Of a DNA stretch of 64,000 nt, positions 34,865 through 41,889 are shown piece by piece. The translations under genes and the position numbers were made by a program. The DNA is from Mytilus trossulus (taxonomy: Eukaryota). The stretch lies in NCBI RefSeq assembly GCF_036588685.1, contig NC_086373.1, forward strand, positions 29,078,001 to 29,142,000. The letters run 5' to 3'. The notes under the pieces are model-generated. The model saw nothing but the letters and a program-made list of their open reading frames with translations, had not been told where the DNA came from and made no database searches. Each line of letters opens with the position of its first letter. Position 1 is the stretch's first letter.

Positions 34865-36531
34865 TGGGAATAGTATATCTAACTATATATATGTCACAGC
34901 TCACCTGAACCACAGGGTTAAGAAGCTAGTGAGCTACTACACAATGTTTATTTGCACAAAACATAGATCAAGTTTGAAATTGGTTGGTGTCACTTTTACT
35001 GTTTTTGAGATGTACCGCCAATTTACCAAAAACATTAAATAAAAAAGTCCCTTTACCGGCTAAGTGTCCAATCGGTATTGCTAAATTTTAAAATTCATCA
35101 CCTTTAATTGCTTGTGGTCAATTTTGTTTCACTTGGCCAAAAGGTTTTTTAAGTGAAGATTTTTTTTCTTAAAGTTATGAACAGCGAATGGTGAGGATAA
35201 AAGCTCACTTATATTATAACAAAAAGTAGATTGATATTCGTGTACTCCCTTTATTATAACAAATGTATTTGACTCATTACAACGATGTGGATGGTATATG
35301 GATTGTTGGTATATTGTGAAATTAGCCGTTGTGTTGATTCCCGACAGGCTCTCAACAGACGAACTACATCTGTGAGAGCTGGTACTGGGTCTTTGCATGA
35401 TGTGGGGAAACTAGCTGTGACAATGCCAAGGATGGTACATGACATTGCTGCCGATATAGAGGCCGGCCGGGATCGACTGACATCTAGAATATCAAGAAAC
35501 GCGCGATTAATATCATAGCGGCTTGATCAGTTTATATACTAAGTTCTGAATGTCCTAGTAACCCATAGCTGACTGTAACAAACAAAAGATTTGCCGAAGA
35601 AGGCTGACCTTTGTCCTAACTCTTCAGATGTTCTATATAACTCTACTAGACATATATATATATATATAATTTGGCAACTGTTAAAGTCTCACTGTACAGA
35701 CAAGTTCAATAGTTTATAAAAGTGCTTATTTGACATATTTGAAATGTACTACGCTTGAAAAATGTATAGAACATTTAGACAATAATTCTATGTAAAATAG
35801 TTTACAAAGTAGAACCCACATACATCAACTAATAAACTATATGAAATAGAATAAATTTCATTTTTCTATTACAATACTCAACCCGATGGTTAAGATGAGA
35901 TAAAAATCTGTGATAATGAATTTTAATCCGAATAAAAATAATTCCGCAAATTCGTTATGTTATCACAAATATAATCCGTTGTAACCAATTTTACAATTCG
36001 TTATTACCATTTTAATTCGTTATCGCTAATAACAAAAAAATAAATATTTTTGGGAGGTCCTAAATAGGTTGCCGTAGTATAACAACCTAACATTGAATGT
36101 ATATAAGAATCACTCTTTGAACAAATCGTATATGCATACATCATAAATCGAGTCTCATAGCTGGACATCGAGAACGTAGAAACATCTATGACTTCATCGT
36201 ACTTTACTGGTGCAAGCAAATTGGTACCGTTAATCATTTTTACTACCACTGGGTCGATGCCTCCGGATCGATCCGCTGGTGGACTATTAGTCCCCGAGGG
36301 TATCACCAGCCCAGTAGCCAGTACTTCGGTACTGGCATGAACATACGGATTTTTTGGTGTTATTAAAATTTGCTGTTACAAAATATTAGAATTTATTATA
36401 AATTAAGGAATGTATCTCCCTCAAACAAAGCTCTGATTCCTTTCATGGATTTGGCCATAATTTTTGGACCTTTTGGGTTATAGCTCTTCATCTTTTTTAT
36501 AAGCTTTGGAGTTTGAATATTTTGGCCACGA

Positions 36532-36567
36532 GCATCACTGAAGAGACATGTATTGTCGAAATGCGCA
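36532..36567 (+). ncRNA. Hammerhead ribozyme, family B, 5' part (split by L2; remainder at 39851-39858)
   Basis: GCAUCA-CUGAAGA-GACA(UGUAU)UGUC-GAAA-UGCGCA, then LINE sequence. UC-UGGUGC resumes after the LINE tail. Confidence 0.85.
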
Positions 36568-36702
36568 ATAAGGACCAATCTATGTTTAGTGAATGAATCG
36601 TCTGCCTATGAAAATGAGGAATTTAAATACGATTTAAAATTCAAAGGCCAACCACTCACCTTCTTTACACCTGCATCTGTATAGGAAATACGTAAAATTA
36701 TT

Positions 36703-38234
36703 TTGAAAGCTCCAACCAAATCATGCGAGTTAGACCCTCTTCCGACAAATATACTAAAACCGTGTCTAAATAGTTTAGCTACCGTCATCACCAAGATAGT
36801 GAACTTGTCACTGGAACAGTGTTGTGTACCATCATCTTTGAAGGAGGCAGTTGTCCGACCACACTTGAAAAAAGTTGGTCTAGACAAAGAGATATTGAAA
36901 AATTATAGACCAGTCTCTAATCTTCCGTTTGTATCTAAAGTGGTCGAAAAAGTCGTCGAAACTCGCCTTGAAAACCATCATACGTCAAACTCTCTTCACG
37001 ACAATGTACAATCAGCTTACCGTGCGTGTCATTCGACCGAGACAGCATTGTTTCGTGTGCATCATGACATCACTGTCGCACTTGATAACGACTGCTGTGC
37101 CGTTTTACTCATGCTAGACCTATCGGCTGCTTTCGATGTTATCGATCATCCTATTCTCATAAAGCGGATGGAATACTCTTGTGGGATAACCGGTACAGCA
37201 CTCAGTTGGTTGAAGTCATATCTCGAGATGAGGACTCAGCGAATCGCCATTGGTTCTGTTCTTTCTGATGAGATTCGTCTCCTATTTGGTGTTCCTCAAG
37301 GATCGGTCTTGGGACCAAAACTTTATTGTATTTTCGCAAGACCAATTGGCGAAATATGTAAACGACATAATATGTGCTATCACTGTTATGCAGACGACAC
37401 ACAAGTTTATCTCGTCTTTAAACCACTTGATAATTGGACAACTATATCTAAGCGACTCGAGGCTTGCGTTGCTGACATCAGCAAGTGGATGTGCTCGAAT
37501 CTGTTAAAATTGAACGAGGACAAAACGGAGCTGATAGTGTTTGCTCCAAAAAAACGAGTGAAGAACCTCTCAGACTTGCATCTTAATTTTGGTGGAAACG
37601 TTGTCAGTGATACTGAGTGCGTAAAAAACCTAGGCATTTATTTCGAGAAATCTTTGGCAATGGACAAACAAATTAGCGCTGTTTCAAAATCATGTTTTCA
37701 TCAGATAAGAAACATTGGACGAATTCGTCCTTTTATTACCGAAGAAGCATGCAAAACATTAGTATGCTCCCTTGTAACCTCTCGTTTGGATTATGGGAAC
37801 GCATTGCTGTATGGACTTCCATCAACTACTATTCAAAGATTACAGCGAGTACAAAACACTGCAGCCAGGGTCATTACAAGGAGGAGGAAATACGACCACA
37901 TAACGCCAATCCTAAAGTGTCTACATTGGCTCCCCGTAACATACAGATGCCAATATAAACTCCTCGTCTATGTGTTCAAGGCTTTGCACGAGGAGGCACC
38001 GGTCTACCTACAAGAACTCGTTAATATATATAAACCAATGCGAACACTCAGATCAGAAAATGCCATGATATTATAAACACCACGTGTGAGAACAAAAACA
38101 TATGGGGAGAGGAGATTCGACAAGCAGCATCCGTTTTATGGAACGATTTACCATGTGATATCCGGAACATCCATTCTGTGAACGCTTTTAAGAAACACCT
38201 GAAAACTCATTTATTCAGACATGCTTTTTCATAG
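36703..38234 (+). pseudogene. L2 ORF2 reverse transcriptase, disrupted
   Basis: 457-aa open segment 36703-38076. There is an in-frame TAG just upstream, a TAA at 38074-38076 and a frameshift near 38125 before the natural stop at 38232-38234. Confidence 0.9.
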
Positions 38235-38486
38235 TTTTAAAATATTTTATATCACTGTAATTTTTGAAGTTTTAAGCAAATACTTTTTTTGAATTTTTTA
38301 AGCAAATATTTTCTGAATTTTTTAAGCATATATATTATTTTTTTTTTAGCAAATATATTATTTTTTTTTTATGAATTTTTAAGCAAATATTTTTAACTTA
38401 TTTTTATTTATACGGGTTCAATGTCTCCTTTATTTTCAATTTGAGTGTTGATCAGTAAACTTAATAGTACACTTTTATATGTCATT

Positions 38487-39683
38487 TATAAGGTCTTTCC
38501 ACTTTTCTGTGGAAAGACCTATTGTTTTTCTTCTGATTATTTTTTTTTTCTTCCGCCTAATTTTGTTCTTGCGATAAACATTTGTTTCGCAATATGTCGC
38601 TTAGATATTTTGTATATAATATCGAACAGTTTATGAGCTTTTGAAATTTACCCTGCGTAAACGAATACTTTTCTTTGTAGGAGTTATCTCCCCAAACACT
38701 GTTTTCCTTGTTATCGCATCTCCTTCGCAACCGTAAAAGATTATGACAAATTTATTTTACAAAATTGCTCGTTATATCCTTCGCATGATTTGTCCTATTT
38801 TGACCGAAGCGATATGACCGCTCCATATGAGAGTTATTTCCCCTTATGCATCTGATATAAGTGATATGAATTTCTATCTTATAAATCATAAGTGATAGAG
38901 ACCTAGGATCTTTTGATTTGAGGTCCCTGGTCCCAAAAAATGAAAATTAGGTCAAGGTCAAAGGTCAAGGTCATATTCTAATATTTGAATTTGGCTTATT
39001 TTCACTTATATCCAAAGACTGTATAAGATATCAACAAATTATTTTTACTAAATTGTTAGTTGCGACATGTCGTAAGATGTAAATTTTGATTGCAAGCGTA
39101 CGTTGAATGTAAAAGGGAGTTTTCTCCCCTCTTGTATTTAAAAATACGCGTTTGGTGATATAACTCATTAACTAAATATAATTAAGACCTATGGTCTTTT
39201 GATTTGAGGTCCTTGGTTTATGACCTTGAAATTGATCTCAAGGTCATAGCTTAATTTGACGTTCTAGATTTTGACCTTTGCTTTTATTCTATATGTATAC
39301 ATGATAAAGACATACAACTTTTAGAAAAAGGTATCAAACCATTTAACCTTGAAAAAAACCAACCGGAAGTGACCTTTTGTAAACTGGAAGAAGCTATTTT
39401 TTTGTACTTATTAATATAAAAGTATATAGAACCAGATATTTTTGGAATCAGTGTCAACTAAATATTCAAATATAATCGGAAGTAACATTTTTCAAACCGG
39501 AAGTAACAAATTATCTCCCTTATTTAAAAAAAATGTATGGAAACAATATATTTTTGGAATCAGCTTACTAGGAGCTATCATTTGACGATTGAAATGACAT
39601 TTTAAACTTGGTTTCACAACTTTTCATATCAAAATACATTGTTTTGATGGAAAGACCTTCAATTGTTCTCTGAACAATTGGTT
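38487..39683 (+). mobile_element. Helentron-associated non-autonomous element (HINE/DINE-1-like) nested in the L2 3' UTR
   Basis: 5' aggtctttcc..ggaaagacct palindrome/subTIR, 3' ggaaagacctt subTIR plus hairpin caattgttc-tct-gaacaattg, with T-rich ends. Confidence 0.75.
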
Positions 39684-40165
39684 TTTAATTTTAGATTATG
39701 TTTGTTTTTATTAGGATCTCATAACATGGGCTTTCATATTTTATTGTTAATACTTGTATATCTGTATGAATATGTTGTAAAGCGCTTAGGGTAATTTTTG
39801 ATATTATATAATGCGCTATTATAAATACTGTATAATAATAATAATAATAATCTGGTGCAAGAAAATTGGTACCGTTAATTTGTTTACTACCACTGGGTCG
39901 ATGCCTCTGCTGGTGTACTATTAGTCCCCGAAGTTATCACCAGCGCAGTAGCCAGTACTTTGGTACTGGCATGAACATACGGATTTTTTTTTGTTATTAA
40001 AATTTGCTGTTTTAAAATATTAGAAATTATTAGAAATTAGGGATGGATCTCCTTCATGCAAAGCTCTGAATCCTTTCAAGGATTTGGCTATACTTTTTGG
40101 ACCTTTTAGATTATAGCTCTTCATCTTTTTTTTTAAGCTTTGGATTTCAAATATTTTGGCCACGA

Positions 40166-40209
40166 ACATCACTGAAGAGACATGTCTTGTCGAAACGCGC
40201 ATCTGGTGC
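40166..40209 (+). ncRNA. Hammerhead ribozyme, family B, one stem III mismatch
   Basis: ACAUCA-CUGAAGA-GACA(UGUCU)UGUC-GAAA-CGCGCA-UC/UGGUGC. Confidence 0.8.
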
Positions 40210-41889
40210 AAGAAAAATGGTAGCGTTATTTTTTTTAATTGAAATTGAATATGAAAAATGAACAAAACAACTACGACCGTTAACAAAAGTGATAATCATA
40301 TACAAACGTTAAACACAAACTGGATAACAGACCAATCCCGCAGAAGGCATTATTTAATAAAGCATAACAAAAACAAAAAAGCTAGCACGAAATTACTAGT
40401 TGAGGAGAAAAAGGATTGTCATTTTAATGTCATTAAATTTTTAGTTTTAATATGTATAAAGTGCTTTCGCATAATCGAGTACCATAGCTGGACATCTGAA
40501 ACGTGGTTTCCTCAAAGAAACATCTTTGGCCGAGTTCAAATAAAACTCTCTAGTTAATTTTACTTACTCGGGTTTTAACAAAACGATTTTACTTGAACCA
40601 CTCGAGTTAACCCCTCTTACCCTGGTTCCAACCCTCACCGAGCTAGGTTTAAACTCGAGAAACTCTTGAATGACGTCAAACCAATGAAATTTTTTTTTAT
40701 TTTTTTATGCTTGGTCAGGGCCTTAGAGTTGCTTAGAGTTCCAAATATCAACTCTAGTTCGTTTACGTGATAATCTATTAACTCTGAAGTCGATTGAATA
40801 GTTTCAAGTGTACTCGTCCACAGATTTTATTGTGTACTTACTAAAATAAATCTGAACATGCTGAAATAGAACAAATCAACTACGGCCGTAAACAAAAGTG
40901 ATAAAAAAAAACACGCTGAAAACTAACTGGGTCACTGACAAATCCCGCTGAAGGCATTAATATTCAATAAAGCATAAAAAAGAAAGCTTTCAAACTCAGT
41001 GAGGAGAAAAAGGGTTGCCATCCTAAAAATCTTTTGAAGTATTCAAATGTGATAGAAATGATTTCATGCAATTACTTTTTCACCAAATACAACTTTTTTC
41101 CAAGGGCTCGATGGTGACCGAAAAGAAATCCAACTATATATTATTGCTGTTATTAAAATTTTAGTTTACATATCTTTGACTGAAAGAGCATTCGCATATA
41201 ACATTACAACTTAACATTGTATATCATGTATATAAAATTCACAAATTTTATTAATCGTATTTCATATATTATATCGAGTCTCATAGATGGACATCGGAAA
41301 CGTGATTTCCTCGAAGAAATACTTTGATTTCAATGTGTACCTTTTTAAATCTAAAAACAAACAAAAAAACAACGACCGCAAACTGGGCAACAAACAAATC
41401 CCCTTGAAGCAATATTAAATAAAGCATTACAAAACAAGAAAGCCTTCATAAAATTACTCAATGAGGAGATAAAAGGTTGTTATTTTAATGTAACGTTTTG
41501 GTGATTTGTTTCAAAATCTTTTGAAGTATTCAGATGTAATAGAAATGATTCCATCCAATTACTTTCTCATAAAATACAACTTTTCTTCAAGGTCTCGACT
41601 ATCACCGAAGAAAAACGTAACTGAAAGGTTAATTGTTGACATTAAATTGTGGTTTTGATTATGTATGCAAAACGTAATTTAATTCAAAATCATATCTATT
41701 GATACAAAACTTTATGTTTAGAGTTACATACTCATATCTTCTTCTATCCATGTCCTTTATAGTCTGTAAATATCGTTTTTTATGTCCTTAGTGCAAATTA
41801 AATAAATAAGCGTAGGATTGACAACGTCATTTTGATTAATTAAAAGCAGCAGCAGATAACCAATATTAACATCACATTAAATTATAATA

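What the first reader, a model, noticed from the sequence alone, without database searches (positions are those of the whole stretch)
36532..39858. L2 LINE inserted inside the AUC cleavage triplet of a hammerhead ribozyme
Seen: the intact sister HHR reads GAAAcGCGCA-TC-TGGTGCAAG (40192-40212). The first copy reads GAAATGCGCA (to 36567), then 3.3 kb of L2, then the (TAA)n tail and TCTGGTGCAAG (39851). The break lies 2 nt 5' of the scissile bond, with no TSD beyond possible 1-nt A microhomology. Inference: either a chance DNA insertion that destroyed the ribozyme, or an RNA-level chimera formed by template switching or ligation at ribozyme-generated ends, which would link L2 RT with retrozyme mobilisation.
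Basis: partly seen in the sequence, partly recalled or inferred. Interest (0 to 1): 0.8.

Follow-up and report, generated by a model that had tools for sequence, protein, structure and literature searches.

The report
Young LINE inside old mussel retrozyme
A young, 5'-truncated LINE retrotransposon inserted as DNA into a much older tandem pair of self-cleaving "retrozyme" repeats in a mussel genome and split one hammerhead ribozyme; it is an ordinary nested transposon insertion, not evidence that the LINE moves retrozymes.

Summary
A retrozyme monomer ends at ...GAAATGCGCA (36567). A 3.28-kb insert follows, ending in (TAA)6. The retrozyme then resumes at TCTGGTGCAAG (39851), and an intact sister hammerhead lies at 40166-40209.

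The insert is not all LINE. It is about 2.1 kb of a 5'-truncated, decayed RT-encoding LINE (36568-38489 plus ~39690-39850). A younger 1.2-kb repeat is nested in its 3'UTR.

The RNA-chimera reading is not supported:
- The two flanks add up to an intact site with no base lost or gained.
- The TC that precedes the cut lies on the wrong side for ribozyme-made RNA ends.
- The 5' junction has a 2-nt CA microhomology.
- The LINE carries 0.58% private substitutions, against 4.9-6.6% for the flanking monomers (Fisher p about 1e-9), so it arrived much later.
- The junction is unique in the 1.3-Gb genome.
- None of 29 other 3' ends of this LINE family lies near a retrozyme.
- Interrupted retrozyme copies are no commoner at this site (7) than at two control sites (12 and 22).
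- Retrozyme arrays have their own constant 3' end, 33 nt past the cut, without a (TAA)n tail.

An empty allele could not be tested. The scan holds other first-stage notes of retrozymes beside or inside LINEs on other DNA of this genome; I did not check them.

The parts
36207..36567 (+). Retrozyme monomer 1. It starts at or 1 nt before the hammerhead cut position and ends at GCGCA, 2 nt before the cut.
   Evidence: It is 90.6% identical to monomer 2 and differs from the family majority at 17 sites (4.9%).
36532..36567 (+). 5' part of the split hammerhead: helix I 5' strand, CUGAAGAG core, helix II, GAAA and the UGCGCA palindromic loop.
   Evidence: by homology to the intact copy. One search finds no hammerhead hit in the split copy.
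36566..36567 (+). CA microhomology at the 5' junction, shared by the retrozyme and the LINE.
   Evidence: In one search, 12 other LINE copies align from query position 27, which is window 36566.
36568..38489 (+). 5'-truncated LINE, part 1: RT region, ORF2 C-terminus and the start of the 3'UTR.
   Evidence: One search gives RVT_1 at E 5.6e-28. One search shows 94-98% identity to other copies. One search shows in-frame stops at 36682-36684 and 38074-38076 and a frameshift near 38120.
38490..39689 (+). Nested 1.2-kb non-coding high-copy repeat inside the LINE 3'UTR (the right end is uncertain by a few nt).
   Evidence: One search gives 1629 candidates. Searches show that other LINE copies are contiguous across this point, and that other copies of the repeat are 95-98.6% identical.
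39690..39832 (+). LINE 3'UTR end, ...TTATAAATACTGTA.
   Evidence: at least 225 candidates and 40 scored copies, all followed by (TAA)n-like tails in unrelated flanks.
39833..39850 (+). (TAA)6 microsatellite tail of the LINE.
39851..40203 (+). Retrozyme monomer 2. Its first bases, TC then TGGTGC, are the 3' part of the split hammerhead (U16.1, C17 and the helix I 3' strand).
   Evidence: 2146 candidates in the genome; 23 sites, 6.6%, off the family majority.
40166..40209 (+). Intact type I hammerhead at the junction of monomer 2 and the tail. The predicted cut lies between 40203 and 40204.
   Evidence: RF00163 at 21 bits, E 0.017, full model 1-45, below gathering score because helix III is minimal.
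40204..40238 (+). Terminal tail of the array, about 33-35 nt past the cut. This copy is decayed, so the end is approximate.
   Evidence: about 20 other arrays end at the same point...CCGTTAATTTTATT.

Best explanation
The site held an old retrozyme array of two units plus the usual short tail. A copy of a (TAA)n-tailed LINE family later integrated there as DNA by target-primed reverse transcription.

Inferred steps of the integration:
- The bottom strand was nicked opposite A|TC.
- The (UAA)n end of the LINE RNA was copied from that nick.
- Synthesis stopped about 2.1 kb in, which gives the 5' truncation.
- The cDNA end was joined to the upstream DNA through a 2-nt CA microhomology, without a target-site duplication.

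A third element then inserted into the LINE's 3'UTR.

The LINE separates GAAA and the loop from the U-C cleavage dinucleotide and the 3' strand of helix I. This kills one of the array's two hammerheads, so monomer 2 can no longer be cut out of a transcript.

The position 2 nt from the scissile bond is most likely a coincidence.

Shown: the anatomy, the relative ages, the uniqueness of the junction, and the lack of positional excess. Inferred: the order of the nicking and joining steps.
For: - Exact continuity of the flanks, GCGCA|TCTGG, with TC on the right.
- CA microhomology at the 5' junction.
- A true family 3' end plus (TAA)n, found in at least 225 places with unrelated flanks.
- Only about 17 copies reach this far 5', which is typical 5' truncation.
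- LINE private substitutions are 8/1389 (0.58%), against 13 and 19 of 347 for the two monomers. Fisher p = 1.2e-9.
- The two monomers differ from each other by 9.4%, whereas other arrays are 96.6-99.6% identical within themselves.
- The pattern of LINE 3' end followed by the retrozyme start occurs once in 1.3 Gb.
- None of 29 other LINE 3'-end loci holds a retrozyme within 1.5 kb.
- Interrupted copies number 7 at GCGCA|, against 12 and 22 at two control positions.
Against: - No empty allele was seen. Logan contigs were too short to bridge either junction, and the assembly holds no second haplotype of the locus.
- The insertion point coincides with where the retrozyme's terminal tail begins, and a chance hit within ±2 nt of the cut has a prior of only about 1.4% (5/353).
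- The age argument assumes that the monomers were close to the family majority when they were inserted.
- The control counts could not be inspected letter by letter and may include indel variants.
Confidence: 0.85

Rival explanations
1. Break capture. An endonuclease of the retrozyme's autonomous partner (Penelope-like or similar) recognises the tail region in DNA. It nicked the array at the start of the tail, and the LINE cDNA was captured at that pre-made break without its own endonuclease, which would explain the missing TSD.
For: - The insertion lies exactly where the 35-nt tail unit (TC...TTTTATT) begins.
- There is no TSD and the 5' junction has a 2-nt microhomology.
- The literature reports that Penelope EN needs the tail sequence for cleavage, and that two RT start sites bound the tail (PMC11167929).
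Against: - There is no excess of interrupted copies at this site compared with two control sites (7 against 12 and 22).
- About half of this LINE family's copies also lack a recognisable TSD.
- No partner element or endonuclease was identified here.
Confidence: 0.09
2. Single-event cDNA or RNA chimera. One reverse-transcription run copied retrozyme RNA, switched to LINE RNA at or near the ribozyme-made end, and switched back. All three parts would then have been inserted together, which would link the LINE RT to retrozyme mobilisation.
For: - The junctions lie close to the hammerhead cut.
- The array itself starts at the cut position, 36207/36208.
- One other array (L016) carries a foreign 456-nt repeat unit joined at ATCTGG.
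Against: - Ribozyme-made ends would put TC to the left of the LINE and TGGTGC directly after (TAA)n. Here TC is on the right, and the site is rebuilt exactly.
- The LINE is 6-9 times less diverged than the flanking monomers.
- The junction is unique.
- Retrozyme arrays end in their own tail, never in (TAA)n.
Confidence: 0.03
3. Assembly artefact. The LINE was placed between two retrozyme units by a mis-join of repeats.
For: All three components are high-copy repeats, and no read or contig bridging either junction was recovered.
Against: - The junctions have the exact anatomy of a real insertion: a family 3' end plus tail, a microhomology, and exact target continuity.
- Run X1 covers both outer array ends with zero differences.
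- The contig is 113 Mb long.
Confidence: 0.03

Closest known systems
Metazoan non-LTR retrozymes of mussels (Cervera & de la Peña 2020, PMC7229834)
   Same: - A tandem repeat of about 353 nt.
- A type I hammerhead with minimal helix III and a palindromic loop.
- Thousands of copies (2146 candidates; at least 2412 hits to one anchor).
- A mollusc host.
   Different: This copy is an old, decayed two-unit array, and one of its two ribozymes is split by a LINE.
Nested insertion of a CR1/L2-type LINE with a microsatellite tail by target-primed reverse transcription
   Same: - 5' truncation.
- A defined 3' end followed by (TAA)n.
- Microhomology at the 5' junction.
- A short or absent TSD.
- Hundreds of dispersed copies.
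   Different: The only difference is the target. Clade membership (L2) was not tested by phylogeny.
Penelope-like element insertion layout: pLTR, 30-40-bp tail, hammerhead (PMC8557442, PMC11167929)
   Same: Retrozyme arrays here show partial tandems, 5' truncation and a constant extension of about 33-35 nt past the hammerhead cut.
   Different: An earlier scan note points to a HERO/R2-group LINE with ribozyme-bearing pseudo-LTRs as another candidate partner; I did not test it.

Membership tests
Hammerhead ribozyme, type I (RF00163) | Conserved core CUGANGA ... GAAA ... UH cut site, in the right order, with helices I and II | tested here: met
   the full-length model match at 40166-40209 shows CUGAAGAG, GAAA, AUC then UGGUGC, with helices I and II paired.
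Hammerhead ribozyme, type I (RF00163) | Score at or above Rfam's gathering threshold (34 bits) | tested here: not met
   The score is 21 bits, E 0.017, and one search gave no hit at gathering score. The shortfall comes from helix III, here one pair plus a GC palindrome. The literature describes this for animal retrozymes and PLEs (PMC7229834).
Hammerhead ribozyme, type I (RF00163) | Self-cleavage | not testable with these tools
   This needs in vitro transcription. A mussel retrozyme of this kind was shown to cleave in PMC7229834.
Metazoan non-LTR retrozyme | Short tandem units (150-450 bp), each carrying a type I hammerhead across the unit junction, dispersed in many copies | tested here: met
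   a 353-nt unit, arrays of 1.1 to more than 9 units on many contigs.
Metazoan non-LTR retrozyme | Expression as monomeric circular RNA | not tested
L2 clade of LINEs | RT domain of non-LTR type | tested here: met
   PF00078, E 5.6e-28; thousands of bivalve RT relatives, none named to clade.
L2 clade of LINEs | AP-endonuclease domain N-terminal of the RT | not testable with these tools
L2 clade of LINEs | 3' end with a short microsatellite tail instead of poly(A) | tested here: met
   (TAA)n-like tails on 25 or more copies.
L2 clade of LINEs | Phylogenetic placement of the RT within L2 rather than CR1, Rex1 or another clade | not tested
   No reference LINE library was available. The C-terminal ...LHWLPV... 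and ...RTKTYGERRF...LKTHLF... motifs resemble the CR1/L2 group from memory only.

The most novel reading that the evidence does not exclude
The start of the retrozyme tail, 2-3 nt before the hammerhead cut, is a recurrently nicked DNA site, cut by the endonuclease of the retrozyme's autonomous partner. The LINE was captured at such a break. Retrozyme arrays would then be fragile sites that trap other retroelements.
Probability: 0.08. Interest if true: 0.6.

Novelty: already known. Interest (0 to 1): 0.15.

Why it matters
If the RNA-chimera reading had held, it would have named a reverse transcriptase that moves animal retrozymes, which is an open question. It does not hold. This locus shows only that retrozyme arrays, like any repeat, are hit by later transposons, and that one hit can silence a ribozyme.

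The useful by-product is a description of how this mussel's retrozyme arrays end. They have a constant tail 33 nt past the cut, variable 5' truncation, and no (TAA)n. That argues against this LINE family as their mobiliser and fits the Penelope-like layout proposed in the literature.

Tried and rejected
- **Empty allele from public runs:** four DNA runs from four organism labels were laid on 35700-40700. Only Logan contigs of about 100-400 nt were available and none bridges a junction, so the test is inconclusive.
- **Second haplotype in the assembly:** the unique flanks match only themselves.
- **A second 'AATAATCTGG' site on C7:** it proved to be a native hammerhead with GCGC deleted, not a LINE tail.
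- **TSD-less insertion as a sign of an unusual mechanism:** rejected, because only about half of this family's copies show a TSD-like match.
- **A sharp natural 5' boundary of retrozyme copies at TC:** 37 of 55 foreign junctions keep TC, but a control position gave 22 hits, so any enrichment is modest and I do not rely on it.
- **First control pattern for left junctions:** it was mis-designed, because the family majority base differs from monomer 2. It gave only a copy count of at least 2412.
- **Naming the LINE clade through a protein word search:** only unnamed RT proteins came back.
- **Search for the rebuilt empty site:** I did not type a joined empty-site sequence to search for it, because joined sequences are not to be typed.

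Full report
**What is there**

The window is C1:29078001-29142000 of a 1.3-Gb assembly. The public runs that hold it are labelled as molluscs.

At 36207/36208 a retrozyme array begins with (C)TGGTGCAAG. Monomer 1 ends at ...GTCGAAATGCGCA (36567). Then come 3283 bases of other sequence, ending in ...ACTGTA(TAA)6 (39850). The retrozyme resumes with TCTGGTGCAAG (39851), runs through monomer 2 to 40203, and ends with a short tail at about 40238.

Rfam finds a type I hammerhead at 40166-40209. It matches the full model with the core CUGAAGAG...GAAA...AUC then UGGUGC, but scores only 21 bits (E 0.017), below the gathering score of 34, because helix III is minimal. The first copy gives no hammerhead match at all.

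**The insert is composite**

- The ORF at 36703-38076 carries RVT_1 (E 5.6e-28).
- The reading frame is broken by in-frame stops at 36682-36684 and 38074-38076 and by a frameshift near 38120. The ORF2 C-terminus ends near 38234.
- Other copies of the same LINE family are contiguous from 38489 to about 39685-39690.
- The 1.2 kb between those points belongs to an unrelated high-copy repeat with 1629 candidates, whose other copies are 95-98.6% identical to this one.
- The last 137 bases before the tail are a true family 3' end. There are at least 225 candidates, and every scored copy carries a (TAA)n-like tail in an unrelated flank.
- Only about 17 copies reach as far 5' as 36566. Their homology starts at 36566, so CA (36566-36567) is shared by the retrozyme and the LINE, a 2-nt microhomology.

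The LINE proper is therefore about 2.1 kb, 5'-truncated and dead. I could not verify the clade name 'L2'. The protein search returned only unnamed bivalve RT proteins.

**DNA insertion or RNA chimera?** Four lines of evidence agree.

1. *Geometry.* Hammerhead cleavage leaves ...GCGCAUC>p and HO-UGGUGC.... A chimera made at those ends would read ...GCGCATC|LINE...(TAA)n|TGGTGC. Instead TC lies to the right of the LINE, and the two flanks add up to GCGCA+TCTGG with nothing lost or gained. That is what insertion into an intact DNA site gives.

2. *Age.*
   - In a four-way comparison with three other copies, the window LINE has 8 private substitutions in 1389 sites, 0.58%.
   - Monomers 1 and 2 differ from each other at 9.4% of sites. 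Other arrays are 96.6-99.6% identical within themselves.
   - Against the majority of 68 other monomers, the two have 13 and 19 unshared changes in 347 sites and only 3 shared ones.
   - In all they differ from the majority at 4.9% and 6.6% of sites, against a median of 1.6% (range 0.6-4.0) for the other monomers. Fisher p = 1.2e-9.
   - The array is therefore old and the LINE young, and the nested repeat must be younger still. A single-event chimera predicts equal ages.

3. *Recurrence.*
   - The pattern 'LINE 3' end, up to 60 nt, CTGGTGCAAG' occurs once in the genome, apart from two unrelated hits.
   - A second AATAATCTGG site is a native hammerhead with GCGC deleted.
   - None of 29 other loci with this LINE's 3' end holds a retrozyme within 1.5 kb.

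4. *Position.* Copies in which the 14-mer ending in GCGCA is followed by five non-native bases number 7. The same measure at two conserved control positions gives 12 and 22. Interruptions are therefore not concentrated at this site.

**The missing TSD is not special**

Among 25 copies of the family with both ends in hand, 13 share a string of 6 nt or more across their ends, against 28% of mismatched control pairs. The window copy has none.

**What the retrozyme arrays themselves show**

About 20 independent arrays end at the same point...TCTGGTGCAAGAAAATTGGTACCGTTAATTTTATT, 33 nt past the cut, and are followed directly by unique DNA. Their 5' ends are spread over the unit, and they hold from 1.1 to more than 9 units. 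Many 35-nt 'solo tails' also exist. None ends in (TAA)n.

This is the layout described for Penelope-like elements: partial tandems, 5' truncation, and a 30-40-bp tail bounded by RT start sites (PMC8557442, PMC11167929). PLEs have been proposed as the partners of animal retrozymes (PMC7229834; bioRxiv 10.64898/2026.07.22.740005). It gives no support to mobilisation by this LINE family.

The LINE does sit exactly where the tail unit begins. That keeps alive a small chance that it was captured at a break made by the partner's endonuclease. The position counts do not support a hot spot. The apparent clustering of retrozyme 5' ends at TC (37 of 55) is at most modest when set against a control position (22 hits, whose letters I could not see).

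**Consequence for the locus**

Before the LINE arrived, the array had two hammerheads flanking monomer 2, so a transcript could release one 353-nt unit. The LINE now separates GAAA and the palindromic loop from U16.1-C17 and the 3' strand of helix I. Only the cut at 40203|40204 remains possible. This is inferred from the structure and was not tested.

**What could not be done**

- Public runs gave only short Logan contigs. Run X1 covers both outer ends of the array with zero differences, but nothing bridges either LINE junction.
- The assembly has no second haplotype of the locus.
- I did not search for a typed, rebuilt empty site, because joined sequences are not to be typed.

**Verdict**

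The cause is ordinary: a nested, late LINE insertion into an old retrozyme dimer, whose closeness to the scissile bond is best read as chance. Earlier first-stage notes in this genome list other retrozyme-LINE neighbourhoods. I did not test them.

Noticed in passing
window 38490-39689: A 1.2-kb non-coding repeat (1629 candidates; other copies 95-98.6% identical to this one) is nested in the LINE 3'UTR between CATTTAT and TTTAGAT. Its type is unknown.
   Followed up: partly
L002-L030 (about 20 arrays on many contigs): Retrozyme arrays share a constant 3' end 33 nt past the hammerhead cut (...CCGTTAATTTTATT). They have variable 5' truncation and no (TAA)n or poly(A), which is the Penelope-like 'tail' layout. 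35-nt solo tails are common (L101, L110, L114, L120, L122, L125, L128).
   Followed up: partly
window 36200-36215: The array in the window begins at the hammerhead cut position (A|CTGGTGC, 36207/36208), with no upstream ribozyme and no clear TSD around the composite.
   Followed up: partly
L016:2553-3017 (G000:C2, about 90302950-90303420): One unit of a 456-nt high-copy repeat sits between a long retrozyme array and its terminal tail. The repeat has 1741 candidates at 96-98% identity, is tandem elsewhere, and has no hammerhead by Rfam. The unit is joined at ATCTGG on the left and ATCTAG on the right, which could be a 6-bp TSD or a unit swap at a shared motif. Unresolved.
   Followed up: partly
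G000:C6:51630692-51635157: A satellite with a 35-nt period contains AGTAATCTGGTGCAAG, the same 11-mer as the retrozyme start.
   Followed up: no
window 40245-40430 and G000:C1:56459823-56462511: The right flank of the array is 75-85% similar to a tandem repeat of about 530-nt period elsewhere on the same contig. 35760-35880 and 40525-40700 belong to other dispersed repeats (117 and 134 candidates).
   Followed up: no
G000 (one search list): About eight other loci show a retrozyme copy ending right after GCGCA with unrelated sequence, for example C1:713739, C1:59673034, C2:93332782, C3:55156346, C6:82715515 and C12:41171147. They may be tail-less ends or later interruptions. They could not be fetched.
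   Followed up: no
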